A DNA stretch of 63,953 nucleotides, filler included, from Sluysia triapertura (GCA_046118255.1; 4 parts of 4 records of this genome joined end to end with filler, not necessarily neighbours in it); one strand, 5' to 3'. Counted from the whole stretch's first letter, positions 39,522 through 52,015 are shown. Notes: generated by a model not told the origin, from the sequence alone. Made by a program: numbers and translations.

Positions 39522-39625
39522 CAATAAAAATTTATCTTTACAATCATTGGTCAATATTTCTTCATCGTTAGGGTTATATATAGCTACACCAATTTTAATA
39601 AATGATAATAGTGACGATGATGGTG

Positions 39626-39682
<57 letters not shown>

Positions 39683-41979
39683 TAACTTCCCTAACATTAC
39701 CTTCAAGATCTCTATTAAATATCCTTTTATCCAGTTCGCGTAATAATAATAATGATAATAAAAATAAAAGTAATGATGACAATAATAATAATCCAAATTT
39801 GCTCAATATTAATCTTTTGATAGCTGTGTCAAAATTACCGTCGTGAGCATCATTATTGTCATTATCAACATCATAATCTAATTTAAAATTACCCAAATCT
39901 TGCACTGATAATAATAATAATGAAAGTAATAAGCAAGTGAAACATTTACTTAAAAACGAAACTTTGTAGGCTTTTCAAGAACGAAATGAATAAATGGGTT
40001 GATCGCAAGTCACAAAAACTCATTCTTCAACAAATTTGTGTTTTTTGTTTTGAAGTTATTCATTGTATTGTTTTAATTTTTTAAATTTAATCGTTTTAAT
40101 AAAAAAAGTGAATTAATTCTATGAAAATATTATTCATTCAAACTTATTTTATAATTTAAATCACTAAATAAATAAATCAATACATGCAAAATAAGAAAAC
40201 GTCAAATAGAAATGATTTCAGCATATTGATAAAATAATCATTTAATGCTTTTAGTTTTACTTCGCTTGTCGCTAAAAATTTCTACAATGAAATTACATCT
40301 AAATACAATGTCAATAATTTAAAGTTAGCTCTTAAATTTATAATCCTGGCCAGCTTTGCAGTATTATTGACAAATGGGAAATGTATAGCAGACGATAACT
40401 CTGACTTAACTCTAAGATTTATATTTTATTTTTCAATTATAGTTTCGTGCTTTTTCACTCCCTTTATCAAGAATACAAACGAAATAATGAAATATGGACA
40501 TTTAATACTACTTCATTATGATGTTGTATTATCACTTATTTTATTATAAATGCTACCGAAAATGATTAGTTTCGATTTATGCTGACAAAATTTTGCCATT
40601 CCTTAAAGTAAATTTTCTTGTGTTTTGTATGGCCAGTCTTAGTTTTAATTTACTAATGAGTATTTTTCTCATATCATACGGATTCATATTATTCGCTGCA
40701 TTTTTATTATGACTAGAGACATTTTTATCTGATAAACAAAACATAGATTTTAATTTAAAATATTCAACCTATACAACGTATAATATAATTCATTTGCCAA
40801 CAAGAAATTTTGATGGTTTAGGAAACGCATCATCTGAATATTCACATGCTGTGACTCTTTTACAGTTCAATTATCATGAGTATTTTTGCAAATTTTTTTG
40901 TCTTATAATAAACGTTTAAATCTTCTTGATATGTCGTTAAAATTCTTGTTTTTTAAAAGGCATTAAGTCTACTTTGTTAATTGTTATTTAAATTATTGTT
41001 TAATTGTTCTATATTAGTTCAAATTTTTAATATATTTAATAAACTTTAAAAAAATAAAAAAGAAACTTAATAAATTTATAAAACAAAAAAATTTGCATTC
41101 AATATATATGTCATGGTAATAATAATTGTGAATGTAGTTAGAGTTGTCGCCAAATTTCTGTGTAAGTTATGCTTATCAAAGGTGTTATACATGAAAATTT
41201 AGACTTATTTTTCCCAGTCTAATAATTTCGATTTAGAAGAATATGTTTATATAATGATGCTTAAACTTGAAAAAGTTTTCATGCACAAATATCAAAATAA
41301 ATTTGTTAAATGTGTTTTTTAAAGTATTATTCAAAAACTTGTAAAGGATTATTACTATGAGAGATAGCAAATAAAATATTAATAATTGTTGTAGTTTTCT
41401 TAAAGCTAAACCTACAACAATATAAAATTAAGCTGGGTCGGTCACAGAAAACGTCTCTGGAACTTGATAAGCTAATAATTTTACTAAATTTATTTAAAAA
41501 TACGATTAGTACGTTCTTAACTTAATGATTTTTAGAGGGTCCTAAAATTTAAGTAAAAGAAGTTTATATGCTTAACGATTAAAAGTCACAAAATTTTATT
41601 AGAAATCAATAAAGAAAGAATAAATCAATACGAAACAATAAAAATTCATATAATTTAAAATTAAAATTCATTTGAATATTTAATCTTACTATTTGATTTA
41701 GTTACAGAAAATTCCCCTTAGTAGATCGTGGCAAAATATTTATATTACTTGGAAAGGTAAAAATTCCCTATAAAAATAATTTACCGCATTCATGGAAATA
41801 AGAATCTGTTTGAAGCGTAATCTACTGTTGATTGTTGAAAATACTTAAGCAGGATGACTAACAATGGATACCCAAAATGGAGTTGATATAATCGTAGCCA
41901 AAGCAGCTAAACAATAAAGCAAGTAGAAAAAGTAGTTAAAACAAAGTAAATGGTAAAATAATGAAATTGATGCTAGTTT

Positions 41980-42060
41980 ATATACTAGTCATCAACCAAT
42001 AGAAATTGATAGAATGTTCTTTTCTATTTTTAGTAAGGAATTTCTTTTTTAGAAAATAAG
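41980..42060 (+). repeat. Dispersed repeat also present at positions 1-110
   Basis: Shared ATATAyTAGyCAkCAACCAAT and TTTCTATTTTTAGTAA blocks; class unknown. Confidence 0.5.
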
Positions 42061-42802
42061 TTATTGAAAAATGAGGTTAGATTAGTGCGGTAAATTGTTT
42101 TTTGGAATCTAACATAACATAATCAATTTAATATGAATTTAGCCTATTTTATAAAATTTGTTCTACATTGTTTTTCTTTAATAACTCCAACATTTCAATT
42201 GAACTGTCTCTTATTCGAATATTATGGTCGTACAAGAAACACGTCTGTACTCTCTATCGATAATATTACTTTATTAATTACTGAGAAACAAGATTTGTAA
42301 ATAAATATTTTAATTGTTCGAGTAGGTATTCCAACTATTTATAAATATAGTATCTTAGCTCAAACTGAAACACTAAAAAATGCAGGATTTTCTCTTATTA
42401 GAAGGCCTAATTCAAAATCTTATGAAATACTATTAAAATTTAATTCTAATTTAGATAGTGGAAAAAGTGATAATCTAAAGAATTTTACAGATGATTTTTG
42501 TTTAATGTCCAAAATTGCCGTTAAATTTGATATATTACAAAAAAAGCAATGTTATCTATGAATGATTTAACATCACCAGGTAAATATAAAAGAAATCGTT
42601 GTAAAACTGATATTATTTTTGAATATCAAATATTGTTGTTTATGCAACCACCTATTATAAAGATTTATCTTATATTTCCTAAAGGAGCAATGAAATTAAA
42701 TAAGGTTCAAGGTACTAACTTCGTTAGCTACGAATTGAAGTTTACGATAAATAGAAATAGGAAATAAAAAATCAAATTTTGCAATAAAATGTATACGATT
42801 AA

Positions 42803-43009
42803 CCCATTAAGGACCAGATTGTTTTTCCAAATTTAAAAAACATGACATGCATTTAGTTATCTTGGAATATCACTTTAAGTACAAGCCCAAATCTTATAAA
42901 AACCTTTTTTGTGTCGCAACACATACCAATTCAATGATTGTGCTAGGAAATTTCATTATTAAAAATATCTTGCAATAAATAAAAAATATAAACCGTGGTT
43001 GATAATGGG
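42803..43009. mobile_element. piggyBac-type MITE
   Basis: TTAA|CCCATTAAGGACCA ... TGGTTGATAATGGG|TTAA: imperfect 14-bp TIRs with TTAA target sites on both sides. Confidence 0.75.
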
Positions 43010-43481
43010 TTAAATGTGTTATTCCTGAACAACAGTGTAAAGATGATTTAATTATTTAACCTTATCCGAAAAGTGATTCTGATCCTATCGAAAATTATGT
43101 TATATTAACTATTATGTTATTAATTTTACTTTATTTCACCTATGTTAGTACATCAGTCGTATGTGATAGAGTATTATTAATATTGTAAAATTACTGCATT
43201 TAAAAACTATTATTTTAAATAATAACAATAATCATAGTTAATTTGTACATATAGTTACATGAACCAATCAGCCATTCTAAATACAATTGCATATTTAGTG
43301 TAAAAATAGATAGTGTAAGCATAAATCCTGAATTGAATGAATAATATTTTATATTTAAATATCATTAAATTAATAAAATAGTTGTTATAGGAAGAAATTA
43401 ATTATGGCATGCAAGCAAAATAAAAATAAAATCAATGCTACTTCTCATTAAATACAAAAATTTAAAATCTAAAATCCAACG

Positions 43482-43715
43482 GAGATAATAGAACAAGTAG
43501 TGTCTGTCCAAAATAAACCAGGAAAACCAGTAACATTACATTTTAAAGATATTATAAACGTGTATCATACAGTCCGAAGCATAAAGCTTCTCGCAAAGTC
43601 TGTAGAGATATACATAGTCAGGATCACGATTTACTATGGATATTTCATATGTGTGGTTTACCAGAAGGTACTGAATACTTATTCCTAGTAGATTGTCAAT
43701 CGAGGGAACATATAG
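43482..43715 (+). pseudogene. PP1-type Ser/Thr phosphatase N-terminal fragment (frameshifted)
   Basis: EIIEQVVSVQNKPGKPVTL... then a frameshift to VCRDIHSQDHDLLWIFHMCGLPEGTEYLFLVD.NRG, matching PPP motifs GDIHGQ and YLFLGDYVDRG with substitutions. Confidence 0.8.
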
Positions 43716-43874
43716 ACAATTCATCTACACCTATATTGAAGTGTCGTGACTGGTTCTATTTGATTTTTTAATATCAATTTATTTATGAAAGTAATCACAC
43801 AATTATTTGCGATCAATAATATTATTTACATATATTACTAATGTATTATTATCAAGGAATCAAAAAATCAATAT

Positions 43875-44095
43875 AAATTGACGACTCCGTAGTCGACAAG
43901 CATCATCATGGAAGATAAAGAAAAGTTGATATTGGAAATTGAAAGAATAACTTACTGTGACCGATAACTAATTTAATTATAACCATGGATTTAACAAGAA
44001 AGTGGAACAGTACTTCAATATTATTTTTCGAAGCTAAAGTATTTTAAACTAGCATCTCATGATAAGCATGAAATAGTGCAACATTTTGGAGCTTG
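43875..44095 (+). mobile_element. Possible Merlin/IS1595-like transposase relic
   Basis: IDDSVVDKHHHGR / EIER / PWI*QESGTVL...KHEIVQHF follow the order of the IDES..RGR, GIER, PGT.I.SD and H..VNH motifs. Confidence 0.4.
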
Positions 44096-45089
44096 AGATA
44101 GTTGGTAAATTACCTATTGAAATTAATTTTAATATATTTTTCTATTTGGACATTCACGATTTGTGTTATTTGTGCGATCAATCTAAGTTGGAAATTGTGC
44201 ACTCTGAGTAATTTTTTCAACGAAACTCGTACAGAAGTTTCTGTCCAACAATGTAATAAAATTATAAACCATGTGAAAATTTCGCAATTTTGAATAGAAA
44301 TATTTTTCGTAATTTGTCATTTGTGGTTCACTTAGATTATCTGACAAATCATTTAAAACGGTATCTGTGCTTTAACTAGACTTCAAATTCTCTTAAATTT
44401 TGTGCTATGAAAAGTTAAGTTCGTTTTCTAAAATTATTCCTAGAAAAGCATAATGATAGTCAATTAAAGCGCTTTTTTCAAACTCTAATTCATTATTATT
44501 TTGGGAATAATTCCTGGAAAGAATTGACGAATTTGATGTTAATCATATGTGGAAGAAGATCGTGTGGGTTTTTGCAGTCTCAAAATAAACAGGGAATGTT
44601 TGAAACTAATTTGGAACAAAGATGAGGAAAGTCGAAATGAAAATGAGGATGACTGTAGAGAACTCAAAAAGAGAACCTTGTAATTGTAAACAAAATCGTA
44701 ATCAAACAAAACAATGCACTCATGAATAAGTTACTATACAAACTTCAAAATATCAAATCATCAAACAATACTCCTAAAACACGAATACAATTCTTAAATT
44801 ATACACTGTAAAATTTCACAAATTATAAGCAAAAATTAACGTTGTTACCTATTATTTTTTTAAGACTTGTATCTATTGTAGTTGTTCTCTAAAATCCTAT
44901 AATAACATCATTAATATTTAAATTTTAACAACTAATTGTATCAATATGAAAAAGATATATGACATTTATGATGGTTTTTCCAATATTTTTGTTCACATTG
45001 GTTGTGATAAAAAAGATTATTTCAATTATTTATCATCTAAAATACAAAAATATCATTAAATTAATGATTATTTTGTCATAATAAGTAAA

Positions 45090-45931
45090 GTGGAACATTC
45101 TAAATTAGAGCCTTTCATTCATAATAAACGATTAGCAAATAATTTTTGCAAATTTTTAAATAATTTTGCTGAAATAGAATTAAATAAAAATATAAATTCC
45201 AACACAAATTATGAAGATTTACAAACAATCAAAATGAAGATAGAATCATTGTTAACACATTATGAGCGGGTATTTAGAATAACAGTTAATAAAACGGGTA
45301 ATAATACCCGCCCCGCTCATAGTGTGTTAAATTGTTAAATTACAGACAACGATGTGATACAAAGAATAAATGAAAGCTATTTGAAGCAATCACCAGATTT
45401 GATTTATGTTAGAGAAAAGATTGATTTTTTGGAACACACTGAATTTAAATTTTGTATTTTTCCTGGTTCTCATTTAAGAAAACTTTATCCATTTGAATTG
45501 TCATTTCAAAAAAGACGTGTTTGTAGCTTATTACTAGTTCATTAGTTTTAGGAGTCGATAGTGACTGCTATCAAACCGCTGTTGAACTGGTGGATCAATA
45601 CTTATATAAAGTAGGTACACAGAACATGGAAACCTGTAACAAGACCACTGTCATGCGTTTGTTTACTGATACTAAATTAACTCAAAAAGAAAATATTACT
45701 ATCGATTCAATCCGACGAATAGTTGGAAATAGATATGAAAGTAAAGAACTGCGTGATGTAGAAAGAGATGTAGTGAAAGCACTCTACAGTATTATGTTAT
45801 TACCGACACCTGATCAATATTTGCGTTACTTTTTATTATTAGATAAACCGAATAATTTTAAACAAATTATTTTTAAGAATTTTGTTTATTACTCTAACAG
45901 TGATGTTAACTTTCGTTTCCGGACTCTTTGA
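45090..45931 (+). pseudogene. Cyclin (cyclin-box) pseudogene
   Basis: Three broken ORFs; LGVDSDCYQTAVELVDQYL and IDSIRRIVGNRYESKELRDVERDVVKALYSIMLLPTPDQYLRYFL fit the cyclin N-domain consensus. TAG at 45524-45526 sits where the conserved Trp is expected. Confidence 0.72.
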
Positions 45932-47122
45932 GAGTACAAAAGTCCTTCATTTGATATTTTGAATTTGATAAACTGAATTTGTTGTTCTATAGTGTAGCTT
46001 TTCGTACTTTCTTTCTGATTATTTCTGATTATTACTTTGATTTAAGTGTTGAAAAATATGAAGAAAATTTTAATAAAATTTAATATTAAAACAAAATGTT
46101 TTTTGAGTTTATTTATGTATATTCTTGAAGCGCTAATTCCATTTTTTCAAAGTATGTGGTGTTCGTTATGTATGGGTGTGACTGTAATAAAAATAGGAAA
46201 TTTAATTTTAAAATGGTTTATATACCAAAACCATTTTATAATCATTTCTTGTAATGTACAAAAGTAATTTATTTGCAGTGTAGAAGCGAATTAATCGTCT
46301 GAATGTTATTAAAAGTTATTTTATCAAGTCTGTTTCGCTATCAATATTTCGAGTTTCAGAAAAGCTAATTATAATAAATGAACGCTTGAATGGATTACTT
46401 AAAAGATTGTAGTTTATGGAGCAAGAACTAAGTTTTAATAATAGTTCCATGTTTCCAAATCTATACATTCGTGAACAACACTAGAATGACCAGAATTTTT
46501 AATACCTAGAAGGCCCACGTGCATCAATTGACGCAAATGCTTGCAATTGGCTGATACTTTCAGAAGTGTGTCGGAATTAAGGTTGTGACATCGTCGTTTT
46601 TCATAATTTTTCCATGTAAAATATGTCAGTTTGTCAATCGACTCACTTGGTCCTTCTAGTGTTAATAAATTTACATGAAGATCTTCTTAATCGCCTTTCA
46701 TCGTATTATTACACGTTTAATGAAGTTAAAAGGCCAATTTTTAAGGGGCACCCTCAAGCCTGGCTCAGTTGCGGTTGTGACTCAGGACACATCATTGCAA
46801 GCAACCGGATGGCAAAAACGATATACTAATCCAAGTTCTTTAAGTAAACGGAACGGAATATTAAAAACAATTAATCTTTAGTATTCGAATTTATAAAAAC
46901 GGCAAAGTGTGCTGGAAACTCAACGCTGCTTACTTCAACAATTTTTATGACGATTTTTTTATTCAAAAAATATTACTATAGGGATTCATAAAAAATTTTA
47001 TACTTTGTGAAATTTAGGTACAAATAAATTCTTGACAGACAAAATATATCAAATATCTAAAATACATGTTATTTGATAAACTTTTAAAATATGTAGACTA
47101 TTTAGTTCACCAATAAGTAATT

Positions 47123-47413
47123 ATGTCACGACGACGAAAATCTGTTACCCAAGTACATATACCTTATATTGCAATACATTGTTACACTAAAAGTCAATGT
47201 TGGGAGAAAGTTGGGGTGAATGTCAAACGTCAAGCCACAATGTTCCTTCCCATTGTGTCTAGATTTTATGAAAATTCAGTCAACAGCTTATTCGACAGTT
47301 TTATCACAAATGATTAATTTCAATTATTAAATTCAAGGTATTGTGGCGGAATTTGAAGAAATGACTATGTGTGATTGTGATGGCCCAGCCCACATCTACC
47401 TACATATCACATA
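47123..47413 (+). pseudogene. Possible decayed TGF-beta-family ligand fragment
   Basis: RRRKS (furin-like site), PYIAIHC, then shifted frame PQCSFPLCLDFMKIQSTAYSTVLSQM...AEFEEMTMCDCDG; only a partial cystine-knot pattern. Confidence 0.28.
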
Positions 47414-48870
47414 AATCATCTAGACAAACCTCATCATAAAAAATACATAACAAATACACCACTCGCAACATCACACCACTCATCCTTACAAAATAAAAAT
47501 TATTTTATTAAACTCAGTGTTCATTGTCATTTGTTATCATTATGACACACTGTCATTTTGCTTCTATCTCGAAATTTTTTCTTTTATATTTTTATGTTGC
47601 TCTACTTGATCAGCCAGACTCACATCTTCTCGCTTGTATAATATTGATATACGTCATAATCTAGAAATTCTAGTTGGAGATTTTCTGCCAGAGAGCTATA
47701 GAAGCAACAAATTTGTGTACAGTTACAATGAGTCCTTAATTAAACAATATTTTATTATGTCTTAAGTATTTTACTTAGTAAAATTTTTAATAATGTAGGA
47801 AGTTATTTTTACGTTTATTATAATTTAAGTGAACAATTAGCTTAGCTGTTTCTTTATTAATAGGTTTATGAATACTTTATCATTTCTTTAATTGATATTT
47901 TCACTTTTTGACAAGATAATTAATGATTTCTTACATATTCAGTTTTCACATTTTTAGTTTCGTTTCCAGTGTATTCTAGCATCTGGAATATTTTCTTAAT
48001 GAAATGGCAGAAAGAAAGTATTAGATTTATCAAGGGAATTAGTCGAAAAGCTTCAAATATTGCTTCACAGTTAATCTCAAATTATTTCTAGTAAATTTTA
48101 TATTTCATTAAAATAGATAATATTTATTATATTGAATTATATCGTGAGTAGATCGTTGTAATCATTGCAACCACTGTCATGGTACTGTGCTACTTTCATT
48201 TATCATAACATAGTTATTTCTTTACGCATAGGCTGCGTCAGTCTTATCATTTCAAAATAATATAACTATTTATTACAATTAAATAAAATTATGTAAGTGA
48301 AATAAAAATAAAATAATTACAACCAAATATTACTATAGAAATAATTTATTTTTAGTGCTACTAATAATATTTTATTTACGAGATTTCATTGGTTATTATT
48401 TTTGGTTTTTTTTATTAGTATAAGTAGGAGTTCTTGTTTGAATATTGATCCGCAGAACACAAATCAAAAAACTTTGAAATAATTTAAAAATATCAAGCTG
48501 CTAATGATGGTGAAGATATAATGCCAAATTTGAAGTAAAACAAAGAAAACATTGATCAATTCGTACGAAAAGTTTTGAAAGATTGAAGTGACTGAAACAG
48601 TAACATATAATCCTAGAATTCATGAATCATAGAGTTTTACATCGGATGATCCTGGTTCAAGTGAACATCATTTTTTACGGGTGCTACCTCGAGTAAAATT
48701 AGCGGATTTTCAAATGATATAAGTAGTACTTTCGATGAAATTAATCAACAGACATTTAAAAATTCTCAACGATTTTAATCGTAGTTCGAAGCTTCTGAAG
48801 ATTCGCACAGATACGCCTATATTTAAAATACCTTTTTACGGAAAATGATGTGCATGTTTAAGATGTAAGT

Positions 48871-49398
48871 GGTAATCAACTTTTACATGAAATCGAAATA
48901 TCAAAAGTTAGACATCCATGCATTGCTCGGTATTACCGAACTCGTATTGAATTTCAATCAGTTGTTAAGCAATTAGAATATCCTTTTGGGTATTCTACTT
49001 ATGATTACATTGAAAACTGTTTAAAATAAAACAGCACTTGTGAAATTAAAGAAGTATTTCTAAAAAAAATGATTTCTAATATTCTGTCAGCTATATATTA
49101 TTTAATTGATAATGCCATATGTACTCATAATGACATTAATGTTAAAAACATTTGTGTACAAACATATATAATTGGATTTAATTGTAAATCCATGTCTAAG
49201 ATTAGACATAAAAATTTTGTTGCTTTTGTTTTGTATAATTTTGAAAATGCATTGACCGATTTTGAAGACATAAACAATGTCGCATTCAATAAGGATATGT
49301 TTGAATTTATATTCTCACAAAATGTCATTTTTAATTTTAATCTAAGTCTTGAAGTTTTAATTCAAAATGTTACATCTCAAAATATGTGGACATTTTAA
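48871..49398 (+). pseudogene. Protein kinase pseudogene (Wee1/Myt1- or NEK-like)
   Basis: LLHEIEISKVRHPCIARYY...QLEYPFGYSTYDYI...(TAA 49027-49029)...NILSAIYYL..CTHNDINVKNICV...LYNFE = kinase subdomains III-VII with degenerate HxD and DFG motifs. Confidence 0.72.
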
Positions 49399-49850
49399 AA
49401 TCTCTAAAACTTATTAGTCTTATATTTGTTTTAAAGCTTAAAGTTTTTGATGTTTTTAGGGATATCGCATAAAATTCATCACACTTCATCACATAAAAAT
49501 ATTTCATACTTACACAGAACATTAAACAAACTACTAGATTCATTCAAAAAACAAGCATAATCATTGTACATAATTATCATGAATTATAGCTATTGTATTA
49601 CAAATCCAACCGTATTAAAATATATAATTATTATCGTCATTATTGCTATATATTATGATTATCATATAATCACTTTCATATTAGCATCAATACCATTATT
49701 TTAAAACGTATAATAATTACGTCGTTGTTATCATTATTTCTTTATCCTTTTTATCAAACTCTTAATTCATGTTTCTTTTTTAGTCCATTTCTCATATTTT
49801 TTACCAGAAATTAAAAATAACATTGTGCAATCACAATTTTGAGTTACAAG

Positions 49851-50297
49851 ATGACTCGTGATGACTATAATGCTATTAGAATTATTCTATTGTTTATGTT
49901 TTATGGACTTCGCTTTTTATTGCTACGAAATCATTTACAAGCATATTTAAATTTGGCCGAAAGTAAAATACGACGTTTGAGAAAAGAAACTGGAAAAAAA
50001 TCAATATTTGATTATCAGAAAGTAGTTTCGAGAATGTTTTTATTGTCTTTGTTTTTTTTTGTACATGACATGCTTATATAAATCAATGGGTAACTTTAGT
50101 TGGATTGGTTCTTATCGAATCAATATCAAAAATAGTAATTCAATGTCAGTCTTAAAAGACTCGATGGATACTAAAGGATTTCATAACATCACGTCATTTT
50201 TTGTTGCCTTTAATTGGTGACTTGACTGAATCTCTTCAAGAATGGTCTCATTCAATTATCAATTTAAGACCAACCTTTTTTGGAATATTAGGGTTCC
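49851..50297 (+). pseudogene. TMEM161: TMEM161 C-terminal fragment (frameshifted)
   Basis: LRFLLLRNHLQAYLNLAESKIRRLRKETGK...QKVVSRMF, then in shifted frames LYKSMGNFSW and FFGILGF; matches remembered TMEM161A/B motifs (HLQAYLNLA). Confidence 0.82.
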
Positions 50298-50802
50298 AAG
50301 ATACCATATGTTGAAGTGTTAACACGTAATAGATACGTTGGTACTACATTCAACTACTAAACATTTGCGACAATTATGTATAGTGAAGAAGCTTAGATTT
50401 TTAACGAAAAATTTCATTAATAAACGAATTATTTTAATTGATGATTCAATTGTTCGTGGAAATATAATTTTCCCTTTAGTGAATGTTTTAAAAAAATTAG
50501 GAGCTAAAGAAGTACATTTAAGAATAGCAAGTCCTCCTATTCAACGTATCCTGTTTCATGGGTATCAACATACCTACAGAAAGTCAATTGATTTTCAACT
50601 CGGTCAATTCGGCATATGAACTGACACACTCGGTGCTGATAGTCTGTGCTACTTGTCAGTACCAGGTTTACATGAAGCCGTTTCAGAAGGAGTAAATCCA
50701 GCCGGGTCGGGCAATGATCCAGATAATTATGGAATTGATGATGTTGATCGACATTGCGATGCTTGTTTAATAGGAAATTATCCTGCTTCGTTGGAATTTT
50801 GA
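50298..50802 (+). pseudogene. PPAT: Amidophosphoribosyltransferase (PPAT/purF) C-terminal fragment, several frameshifts
   Basis: IPYVEVLTRNRYVG.TF / RIILIDDSIVRGN...GAKEVHLRIASPPI / CFMGINIPT / LGADSLCYLSV...HCDACLIGNYPASLEF-stop; animal-type PPAT sequence. Confidence 0.9.
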
Positions 50803-51470
50803 AAAAAATATTCACATTCCTTTGAAGTAATTTTGAACAAGAATCAAATTTTTAGATATTTAGTAAATTATTTCATTTATACTGGAATTTGGGATTGTTA
50901 TTAATTATGAATTATTATTCATGTTTTATCACTTAATGGCAGTCTTTATACACTTCTCATAGTTGTTAATAATTATTTTGCTGATTTTCATTTTATATTT
51001 TATGAATTATGTAATACTTATTTTAGTACACAGTGCAAAATTAAATATTTCAAATTTAATTGGCATTATTAAGTAATTGAATTTAATTAACTTAATGTTT
51101 CAATTAAAATAAAAATAAATATTACTAAAATCAATGATTTAATTCTGTAATATGTTGAAGGCAGCATACACTATTCATCTAACATTTATTGTTGTTTTAT
51201 TTCGAAATTTGTATTATTCAATATAAATTCATGAAGTTTAGTATTTTAAAATTTATTCACTCGAGTATTTTATACTTAACCTTTTTTGGTATTTATACAT
51301 CAACAGTTTATGTAATAAAATGGAATCAAATGTCTAAATGTAAATAATATTCCAACGTATTTATAAATCATGTTTTGTTTATCCTCAACATAATGGGTTG
51401 TCTTTGAGTGAACCAATAAGACCTTCTAAAGACTGTTATGAATCAACATTTGCAAACTATTCAATAGTCG

Positions 51471-51540
51471 ACTATTATGCCAGTTTTAACAGAAGGATTG
51501 ATTGATTGATTGTGGAGACATAAACCAGAATGATCATGAC
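51471..51540 (+). pseudogene. Possible Dpy-30-motif gene fragment (NME5/AK7-like)
   Basis: TIMPVLTEGLID followed by an ATTG slippage and ...KP; resembles the IMPTLLEGL..LC..KP.DP consensus. Very short. Confidence 0.35.
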
Positions 51541-51940
51541 TAGATATTTAGAAATGCATTCAAACATGTATTATCTCATTTTACTAACCTATGTACATTG
51601 TGTTTTTTTGCATATCCACTAAATTTTCATTTGTCACGTGAATAAAAGTTTAATTTTATAATAACGATAGTTATATTATTATGGCAATATTGATAAAAAA
51701 ATTTTTAATTGATTTTTAAAATTATGTTCCTTTTAATATTAATGCTTGTACATTATGGTAATTCTGAACTAGTCGATTTAGCATTTCATAAGTCTGTTAC
51801 TTGCAGTACTATGAAATAAATTCGAATCCACACTTTCCAACTAATAATTCGTCAAATTGCTTTATTAGTGGACTTATTTATAAATATTGGGAAGTGTTTT
51901 TTGCTCCCTCAGTTTATATAAAGTATATAATATTAATTTA

Positions 51941-52015
51941 ATAATATATTAATTTATATTGCGCTCATATCTACCGCGAAAGTACTCAAAAGCGCTTAAG
52001 GTAAATCATTCACTA
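51941..52015 (-). mobile_element. Second copy of the SINE/LINE 3' end, cut by the contig join
   Basis: Reverse complement matches about 22239-22313 with only a few substitutions. Confidence 0.65.

What the first reader, a model, noticed from the sequence alone, without database searches (positions are those of the whole stretch)
40480..51560. Co-oriented array of decayed fragments from unrelated host genes: candidate uni-strand piRNA-cluster-like trap or gene-capturing element
Seen: about 11 kb of one contig has no intact gene but carries intronless, frameshifted pieces of PP1 (43482), cyclin (45090), a Wee1-like kinase (48871), TMEM161 (49851) and PPAT (50298). It also has weaker Dpy-30 and TGF-beta-like pieces, several unidentified broken ORFs and Merlin/Penelope-like relics. 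Every recognisable coding fragment is on the + strand. Known: uni-strand piRNA clusters (flamenco-type) accumulate inserts in one orientation, and Helitrons and Pack-type elements capture co-oriented gene fragments. Inference: minus-strand transcription would yield antisense small RNAs against the parent mRNAs, i.e. a locus regulating host cell-cycle and metabolic genes. The alternative is cargo of a large capture element.
Basis: partly seen in the sequence, partly recalled or inferred. Interest (0 to 1): 0.85.

Follow-up and report, generated by a model that had tools for sequence, protein, structure and literature searches.

The report
Repeat-borne mosaic of broken gene copies
This stretch is a patchwork of repeated DNA carrying dead, intron-less pieces of several ordinary host genes, all pointing one way. 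It fits passenger cargo of mobile or amplified repeats better than a special regulatory locus, which could not be tested.

Summary
The core observation holds. Between 43473 and 50802 the + strand carries decayed pieces of PP1, a cyclin box, a protein-kinase domain, TMEM161 and the 3' third of PPAT. No intact gene is present, and nothing recognisable lies on the minus strand. "Wee1-like" is not supported beyond "kinase-like". Dpy-30, TGF-beta, Merlin and Penelope pieces were not found.

New evidence comes from laying the contigs of the only public run that holds this DNA on 45000-50999. More than 6,000 contigs at 85% identity or better lie there. The cyclin and kinase pieces occur at roughly 100-200 copies per genome. 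Short repeats between them occur at about 10^3-10^4 copies. The TMEM161-PPAT part occurs in a few copies.

Other PPAT copies carry indels that put right two of the window's three frameshifts. The TMEM161 piece is continuous across three intron positions found in another animal, so it is most likely cDNA-derived. It abuts PPAT within about 15 nt.

Best reading: a repeat-rich patchwork with chimeric, cDNA-derived gene fragments amplified as cargo of an unidentified element. The piRNA-cluster idea is untested, because no RNA run was available, and co-orientation alone is not significant. Known kind; moderate interest.

The parts
43473..43768 (+). Decayed N-terminal third of a PP1-type Ser/Thr phosphatase. 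It has one frameshift and a roughly 12-codon deletion, has lost its catalytic motifs, and homology stops at about residue 110.
   Evidence: Pfam STPPase_N E 1e-3; PDB PP1/PPZ E 2.6e-6 with alignment; sequence read.
44104..44175 (+). Weak F-box-like motif (LPIEINFNIFFYLDIHDL).
   Evidence: Pfam F-box-like E 3e-3, PRANC 3e-3 and F-box 0.018, all below their gathering scores.
45258..45320 (.). GC-rich nested palindrome (TATGAGCGGG...CCCGCTCATA, with an inner CGGGTA-ATAA-TACCCG) inside a short repeat of about 10^3 copies.
   Evidence: Hairpin scan; the 45200-45399 bin has depth 22,900 against a single-copy depth of about 12-27.
45390..45533 (+). Possible TIR-domain (MyD88-like) fragment directly upstream of the cyclin box. 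Its 3' end may instead be the start of the cyclin box.
   Evidence: PDB: only MyD88 TIR chains match, E 0.03, with two collinear stretches. No Pfam hit.
45527..45928 (+). Cyclin N-terminal box fragment covering profile positions 46-122 of 127. It is the longest open piece (134 aa) and is part of a repeat of about 100-300 copies.
   Evidence: Pfam Cyclin_N E 4.5e-4; Atlas 0.91 with 19 of 30 hits; depth 2,700-6,500 and 11-21 variant contigs per site.
47800..47999 (.). Fragment of a very high-copy short repeat.
   Evidence: Bin depth 66,800. Position 47901 has depth about 40,000 in 33 contigs. Loose ends with shared consensus sit at 47828/47830 and 47862.
48723..49395 (+). Degenerate protein-kinase domain in three collinear pieces in different frames, at about 100-150 copies per genome. 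The subfamily is not established.
   Evidence: Pfam Pkinase E 0.11 at profile positions 94-132; best PDB hit is a kinase at residues 54-100, E 1.2; Atlas kinase-type clusters 0.90-0.96; depth 1,100-2,650 in 29-35 contigs per site.
49400..49800 (.). Very high-copy short repeat (about 10^3-10^4 copies) between the kinase and TMEM161 pieces.
   Evidence: Bin depths 110,261 and 10,477. Position 49539 T>C has depth 295,530 of 302,133 in 117 contigs.
49753..50296 (+). TMEM161 fragment spanning about residue 260 to about 25-50 residues before the C-terminus. It runs in frames 1>0>1>2 with an in-frame stop, and has no introns at three positions that are introns in another animal.
   Evidence: Pfam Tmemb_161AB E 9e-16 and 0.014; representatives search; tblastn mapping; exon map of L002.
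50295..50802 (+). PPAT (amidophosphoribosyltransferase) 3' fragment, from about human residue 325 to the natural stop codon. It has three frameshifts and one stop. It begins within a codon of an exon start seen in another animal.
   Evidence: PDB E 2.6e-19 and 2.9e-4; homologue fragments; tblastn frame path; L001 exon borders. Frame-restoring indels occur in other copies (checked).

Best explanation
The block is non-functional, repeat-rich DNA. It is a patchwork in which short, intron-less, decayed pieces of unrelated host genes sit head to tail on one strand. They do so because they were joined as chimeric cDNA-derived cargo and then copied as passengers of repeated units, not because each was trapped separately.

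Shown:
- The pieces are partial and broken.
- The cyclin- and kinase-bearing stretch exists in roughly 10^2 diverged copies.
- Short repeats of about 10^3-10^4 copies are interspersed between the pieces.
- TMEM161-PPAT is a low-copy chimera, and other copies in the same genome read through two of its PPAT frameshifts.

Inferred:
- The pieces began as spliced RNA copied into DNA. Switching of template between RNAs, or end joining, would give the tight junctions and the shared orientation.
- They were then amplified by an element whose ends lie outside the piece or are too decayed to recognise. A Helitron-like, Pack-type or LTR-type carrier are all possible.

The locus probably does nothing for the host. 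Whether it is transcribed or yields small RNAs is unknown.
For: Copy number. In run X1, 6,374 contigs at 85% identity or better lie on 45000-50999.
- Exact-match contigs have depth 11-27.
- The cyclin bins, the kinase bins and several bins between them have depth about 2,500-2,800.
- 20-35 distinct variant contigs cover single sites.
- Bins at 45200-45399, 47800-47999 and 49400-49599 reach 22,900, 66,800 and 110,000.
- TMEM161/PPAT has depth 55-168.

Decay and truncation.
- PP1 has lost GDxHG and GDxVDRG and stops at about residue 110.
- TMEM161 lacks about 260 N-terminal residues and its last 25-50 residues.
- PPAT lacks its first roughly 325 residues.

Tight junction. TMEM161 homology ends at 50296 and PPAT homology starts at 50280-50298.

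Spliced origin. Three TMEM161 intron positions in locus L002 (introns of 1.1 kb, 256 nt and 460 nt) are continuous in the window. Many exon-sized fragments from diverse organisms share the borders of the middle exon. One PPAT intron position in L001 is also continuous in the window.

A better copy exists. Indels seen in other contigs at 50546/50551 and 50627 give an open frame reading PPIQHPCFMGINIPT...ELTHLLGADS through to the stop.

Precedent. Helitrons amplify intron-less retrogene fragments and capture fragments stepwise (PMC4224331; PMC3288121).
Against: - No element ends were found. The 12.5 kb piece has no LTR-like direct repeats and no TIRs.
- The one GC-rich palindrome is not followed by CTRR.
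- No reverse transcriptase, transposase or Rep/helicase domain appears on either strand.
- Copy numbers differ between parts, so the array is not one uniform unit.
- That cyclin and kinase belong to one unit rests only on similar depth.
- Depth sums over contigs and is only a rough copy number.
- Intron positions were taken from other animals, not from this organism's own parent genes.
- The PPAT piece is preceded by a splice-acceptor-like TATTAG|G. That would fit DNA-level capture with a piece of intron.
- The PP1/F-box part was not covered by the reads call.
Confidence: 0.55

Rival explanations
1. Uni-strand piRNA cluster. The locus is transcribed from the minus strand and yields antisense small RNAs against the parent mRNAs. 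The one-way orientation is kept by selection.
For: A patchwork of repeat fragments with embedded gene debris is what piRNA clusters look like. All recognisable pieces are on the + strand (against 13, 34, 35). This reading is compatible with, and not exclusive of, the cargo reading.
Against: There are no RNA data at all. Co-orientation is not significant once linked pieces are counted as units: p is 0.06-0.25. Tight coding-to-coding junctions and copy numbers of about 10^2 show that orientation was fixed when the pieces were joined and copied, not by separate trapping. The orientation of the flanking repeats is unknown.
Confidence: 0.12
2. Independent processed pseudogenes that landed by chance in one orientation in a gene-poor, repeat-rich region. 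Deletions later trimmed them and segmental duplication copied them.
For: The TMEM161 piece is intron-less relative to L002. PPAT runs to its natural stop. The chance of five pieces all one way is 0.06, which is not negligible.
Against: PP1 and TMEM161 lack their 3' ends, and no poly(A) tract or target-site duplication is visible. The TMEM161-PPAT junction is within about 15 nt. About 10^2 copies of the cyclin and kinase pieces are far more than ordinary segmental duplication gives.
Confidence: 0.15
3. DNA-level capture by a Helitron or Pack-type DNA transposon from parent genes that happen to lack the introns examined.
For: The PPAT piece starts within a codon of an exon start seen in L001 and is preceded by TATTAG|G. 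A GC-rich palindrome lies in a repeat of about 10^3 copies. Helitrons carry several co-oriented fragments.
Against: Three widely shared TMEM161 intron positions and one PPAT intron position are absent. No TC...CTRR ends or TIRs were found.
Confidence: 0.12
4. Real, working genes that only look broken, because of assembly indel errors or unrecognised introns.
For: PPAT is broken mainly by indels. Run X1 holds versions without two of them.
Against: The X1 versions also differ by clustered substitutions, for example four differences within 17 nt at 50456-50472, so they are other copies. PP1 has lost catalytic residues by substitution and deletion. Every gene is truncated, and neighbouring pieces leave no room for the missing parts. 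In-frame stops are present. Exact-match contigs confirm long stretches of the window (table 8).
Confidence: 0.03

Closest known systems
Helitrons carrying captured host-gene and retrogene fragments (maize; vespertilionid bats)
   Same: Several fragments of unrelated genes lie in one non-autonomous unit and are amplified to tens or thousands of copies. Sub-families differ in cargo and copy number. Some cargo is intron-less retrogene sequence (PMC4224331, PMC3288121).
   Different: No 5'-TC or 3'-CTRR ends and no typical short subterminal hairpin were found. No Rep/helicase is nearby. Here most pieces look cDNA-derived, whereas Helitron cargo usually keeps its introns.
LTR-retrotransposon or retrovirus-style transduction of host cDNA (for example maize Bs1; recalled from general knowledge, not checked here)
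   Same: Intron-less, co-oriented, partial host gene pieces are joined tightly, as expected from template switching between co-packaged RNAs.
   Different: No LTRs and no gag/pol remnants occur within the 12.5 kb piece (Pfam calls). The element would have to be larger than the piece.
Chimeric processed pseudogenes made by LINE reverse-transcriptase template switching
   Same: Spliced fragments of different RNAs are fused head to tail in one orientation. The last piece (PPAT) runs to its natural stop.
   Different: No poly(A) tail, no target-site duplication and no LINE part are recognisable. The copy number of the cyclin/kinase part is far higher than for ordinary retrocopies.
Uni-strand piRNA clusters (flamenco type) and pseudogene-derived piRNAs
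   Same: A repeat patchwork with inserts in one orientation.
   Different: The defining small RNAs were not examined. Here orientation is explained by physical linkage of the pieces.

Membership tests
Uni-strand piRNA cluster | Dense 24-32 nt, 1U-biased small RNAs from one strand only | not testable with these tools
   The only run holding the DNA is not on record as RNA and is kept as contigs.
Uni-strand piRNA cluster | Transposon fragments mostly antisense to the direction of cluster transcription | not testable with these tools
   No transposon library was available, and no transposon protein domain was found on either strand. The orientation of the repeats is therefore unknown.
Helitron with captured cargo | 5'-TC and 3'-CTRR ends with a short GC-rich hairpin 10-15 nt before the 3' end | tested here: inconclusive
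   There is one GC-rich nested palindrome at 45258-45320 in a repeat of about 10^3 copies, but it is followed by CATAG, not CTRR. The ends cannot be defined from one copy.
Helitron with captured cargo | Many genomic copies sharing the same internal gene fragments | tested here: met
   The cyclin and kinase stretches are covered by 11-35 distinct variant contigs per site, with summed depth 1,100-3,500 against a single-copy depth of about 12-27. Shared junctions were not shown.
Pack-type DNA transposon (Pack-MULE/CACTA/hAT) | Terminal inverted repeats flanked by a target-site duplication | tested here: not met
   There are no significant inverted repeats in the piece. The best candidate core is about 16-18 nt of AT-only sequence. 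An element longer than the piece is not excluded.
LTR retrotransposon with transduced cDNA | Long terminal direct repeats; gag/pol remnants | tested here: not met
   No direct repeats beyond microsatellite and short AT-rich matches were found. No RT, integrase or protease Pfam hit was found. An element longer than 12.5 kb is not excluded.
Processed (cDNA-derived) pseudogene | Introns of the parent gene are absent | tested here: met
   Three TMEM161 intron positions of L002 and one PPAT intron position of L001 are continuous in the window. The comparison is with other animals, because this organism's parent genes were not available.
Processed (cDNA-derived) pseudogene | 3' end of the mRNA with a poly(A) tract and flanking target-site duplication | tested here: inconclusive
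   PPAT reaches its natural stop at 50800-50802. No clear poly(A) tract can be told from background in 24% GC DNA. PP1 and TMEM161 lack their 3' ends.
Wee1/Myt1 kinase | Significant, specific similarity to Wee1-family kinase domains | tested here: not met
   Pfam Pkinase E is only 0.11. PDB searches of three pieces never returned Wee1 or Myt1. The nearest Atlas clusters are viral, Haspin-type and generic kinases.

The most novel reading that the evidence does not exclude
The roughly 4 kb unit present at about 10^2 copies might be a mobile element or an endogenised large DNA virus. It would bring its own cyclin-like and kinase-like genes, whose copies here are decayed. Alternatively, the whole array is a one-strand small-RNA source that has trapped cDNA copies of cell-cycle and metabolic genes and silences their parents. 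The evidence excludes neither. The kinase piece's nearest Atlas clusters are giant-virus proteins, though AT-rich composition could explain that. No RNA data exist.
Probability: 0.1. Interest if true: 0.7.

Novelty: new member of a known kind. Interest (0 to 1): 0.38.

Why it matters
If the cargo reading is right, this is an animal example of a repeat family that has picked up and multiplied spliced pieces of cell-cycle and other host genes. Such mosaics supply raw material for exon shuffling. They are also a source of false gene predictions and of pseudogene-derived small RNAs.

For annotation the practical point is plain: none of these pieces should be called a gene.

It would matter more if stranded small-RNA data showed antisense piRNAs against the parent genes. 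That remains open.

Tried and rejected

Word-indexed protein searches:
- TMEM161 piece: nothing found.
- Cyclin piece: nothing found.
- PPAT piece: only about 55% identical animal fragments, no near-identical parent.
- Conclusion: this genome and its close relatives are not in that protein collection.

Looking for other copies or relatives:
- An exact-pattern scan of metagenome contigs for the highest-copy repeat found nothing.
- A viral-contig search with the kinase piece found nothing, so the virus lead has no sequence support.

RNA genes: Rfam and tRNA scans were blank.

Element ends:
- Self-comparison for LTRs and TIRs gave nothing above AT-rich chance level.
- An 18-nt exact repeat lies upstream of PP1 and of the 45090 ORF, with a weak inverted copy at 51931-51950. 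Aligned, it is only a short AT core.

Ideas considered and dropped:
- Ciliate-type genetic code or programmed frameshifting. The frameshifts are ordinary indels of mixed sign and do not sit at stop codons, apart from one.
- Tiny introns at the frameshift sites. The breaks lie a few codons away from the intron positions, one of them in a run of T.
- Cyclin F (F-box plus cyclin as one gene). The two pieces are separated by a high-copy repeat and a TIR-like piece.

Steps not taken:
- Pieces were always searched apart.
- Organism identity could not be established, because run names are coded.


Full report
What is there

The piece (39522-52015) is very AT-rich, at 22-34% GC, and has no long open frame. 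The longest stop-to-stop piece is 151 aa and is low-complexity.

I scanned 60 + strand pieces (all of 39 aa or more) and 30 minus-strand pieces (all of 45 aa or more) against Pfam.

The + strand gave:
- STPPase_N, E 1e-3
- Cyclin_N, E 4.5e-4
- Tmemb_161AB, E 9e-16, plus a collinear 0.014 in the next piece
- F-box-like/PRANC, E 3e-3
- one hit in an Asn-run ORF, which I take as spurious

The minus strand gave nothing better than E 0.016, to an unrelated family. No reverse transcriptase, transposase, helicase, Dpy-30 or TGF-beta domain appeared on either strand.

PDB sequence searches added three things:
- PP1/PPZ for 43547-43768, E 2.6e-6
- human PPAT for 50323-50616, E 2.6e-19, and for 50620-50799, E 2.9e-4
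- a borderline MyD88 TIR match for 45339-45542, E 0.03

The cyclin call is backed by the Atlas, which gives Cyclin_N clusters at 0.91.

The kinase call is weak:
- Pfam E 0.11
- The best PDB hit for the preceding piece is a Ser/Thr kinase at the right domain positions, but with E 1.2
- The Atlas gives kinase-type clusters, the nearest from giant viruses
- Wee1 never appeared

How broken the pieces are

- PP1: RDIHSQ and VDCQSRE stand where GDxHGQ and GDxVDRG should be. There is a frameshift with a loss of about 12 codons, and homology ends near residue 110.
- TMEM161: it runs from about residue 260 to 25-50 residues short of the C-terminus. It uses frames 1>0>1>2 and has an in-frame TGA.
- PPAT: it covers only the last third of the protein, with the path 50295-50351 (frame 0), 50365-50545 (frame 1), 50549-50629 (frame 2) and 50630-50799 (frame 1). 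It ends at the natural stop at 50800-50802.
- Junction: TMEM161 homology ends at 50296 and PPAT homology begins at 50280-50298. The two are joined within about 15 nt, with no untranslated region between them.

None of the pieces can be completed from neighbouring sequence. In-situ decay of whole neighbouring genes, and mis-assembly of working genes, are therefore both rejected.

Spliced origin

A genomic TMEM161 locus from another animal (L002) has exons at residues 278-308, 319-378, 377-411 and 430-483. They are separated by introns of about 1.1 kb, 256 nt and 460 nt. All three positions are continuous in the window.

Dozens of exon-sized fragments from diverse organisms share the borders of the middle exon, so these introns are probably old and widespread.

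A PPAT exon in another animal (L001) runs exactly from SGIPFAEVL to LAKHVG. The window's PPAT piece starts within a codon of that exon start and is preceded by TATTAG|G. It is continuous across the exon's 3' border.

I read the TMEM161 piece as cDNA-derived. For PPAT, a partly spliced RNA source or a DNA-level source cannot be told apart. The parent genes of this organism were not available.

The new evidence: it is repeated DNA

Only one public run (X1, contigs, 2024, not on record as RNA) holds the stretch, with 63% of its sampled words. I laid its contigs on 45000-50999 at 85% identity or better, and 6,374 contigs lay there. Contigs that match the window exactly have depth 11-27.

Against that single-copy depth:
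- The cyclin bins (45600-45999) have depth about 2,700-2,800.
- The bins 46400-46599, 46800-46999 and 47200-47399 have about 2,500-2,800.
- The kinase bins (48800-49399) have about 1,600-2,650.
- Single sites in these stretches are covered by 11-35 distinct variant contigs.
- Short stretches reach 22,900 (45200-45399, which holds a GC-rich nested palindrome), 66,800 (47800-47999) and 110,000 (49400-49599).
- One site in the last stretch reaches 300,000, in 117 contigs.
- The TMEM161/PPAT part has only 55-168.

Many contigs skip or replace segments (tables 5 and 5c), as diverged repeat copies do.

The cyclin and kinase pieces therefore belong to a family of roughly 10^2 copies, and very high-copy short repeats are interspersed between them. 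The TMEM161-PPAT chimera exists in a few copies. Depth is a sum over contigs and only a rough copy number. That cyclin and kinase are one unit rests only on their equal depth.

A better PPAT copy exists

In the PPAT part, other contigs (depth about 33) lack two letters at 50546, have an extra A after 50551, and have an extra ACTT after 50627. Applied to the window, these changes give one open frame from 50365 to the stop, reading ...ASPPIQHPCFMGINIPT...ELTHLLGADSLCYLS.... This matches the conserved PPAT motifs.

The same contigs differ from the window by clustered substitutions, so they are another copy and not a correction of the window. The window's PPAT is thus a fairly young, decayed, truncated duplicate of a sequence that is intact elsewhere at these sites.

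Interpretation

Four observations fit cargo that was joined once and then copied:
- tight coding-to-coding junctions
- absence of introns
- truncation at both ends
- amplification to different copy numbers

This is as known for Helitrons that capture fragments stepwise and even amplify retrogene pieces (PMC3288121; PMC4224331). From general knowledge, it is also known for cDNA transduction by LTR elements and for template-switch chimeras.

I could not name the carrier. The 12.5 kb holds no LTRs, no TIRs, no Helitron ends and no element-encoded protein (Pfam calls).

The one-way orientation then follows from physical linkage. Counted as three to five units, it has a chance probability of 0.25-0.06.

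The piRNA-cluster idea is neither supported nor refuted, because no RNA data could be reached. It is not exclusive of the cargo reading.

Limits

- The reads call covered only 45000-50999, so the copy number of the PP1/F-box part is unknown.
- Junction sharing among copies was not shown.
- Intron positions come from other animals.
- The organism is unknown, because run names are coded.

Noticed in passing
window 39626-39792: An (ATA)n/(TAA)n microsatellite gives long Asn, Ile/Leu or Tyr runs in every frame. It accounts for the largest 'ORFs' of the piece and for a spurious Pfam hit (DUF1003).
   Followed up: partly
window 45258-45320: A GC-rich nested palindrome stands out in 24% GC DNA. The outer arms are TATGAGCGGG/CCCGCTCATA and the inner hairpin is CGGGTA-ATAA-TACCCG. 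It lies in a 200-nt bin with depth about 22,900, so it is part of a repeat of about 10^3 copies. It may be the end structure of a mobile element.
   Followed up: partly
window 45339-45542 (+): The piece just upstream of the cyclin box matches only MyD88 TIR domains in the PDB (E 0.03, two collinear stretches). By eye it has TIR box-1-like and box-2-like motifs. It would be a further unrelated gene fragment fused to the cyclin piece. There is no Pfam support.
   Followed up: partly
window 44077-44208 (+): An F-box-like/PRANC-like motif (E about 3e-3) lies between the PP1 and cyclin pieces.
   Followed up: partly
window 49030-49395 (+): The nearest Atlas clusters for the kinase-like piece are hypothetical proteins of Nucleocytoviricota (0.96-0.93) and pox or Haspin-type kinases. 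This may be an effect of AT-rich composition. A viral-contig search found no relative.
   Followed up: partly
window 43357-43374 and 45048-45065; weak inverted copy at 51931-51950: An exact 18-nt AT-rich repeat (AAATATCATTAAATTAAT) lies about 100 nt upstream of the PP1 piece and again just upstream of the 45090 ORF. About 0.2 such matches are expected by chance. The alignment shows only a short core.
   Followed up: yes
window 46573-47405: This is the GC-richest stretch (31-34%). It is covered by one exact 833-nt contig at single-copy depth, yet holds sub-stretches with depth about 2,500-2,800. Open pieces occur on both strands, with no Pfam match. Its identity is unknown.
   Followed up: no
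window 50546-50551 and 50343-50472: At several PPAT sites every contig of run X1 listed in the shown rows differs from the window, so the window's own letters were not seen there. Elsewhere long contigs match the window exactly. The run may come from another individual or haplotype, or a filter may have dropped the matching contigs.
   Followed up: no
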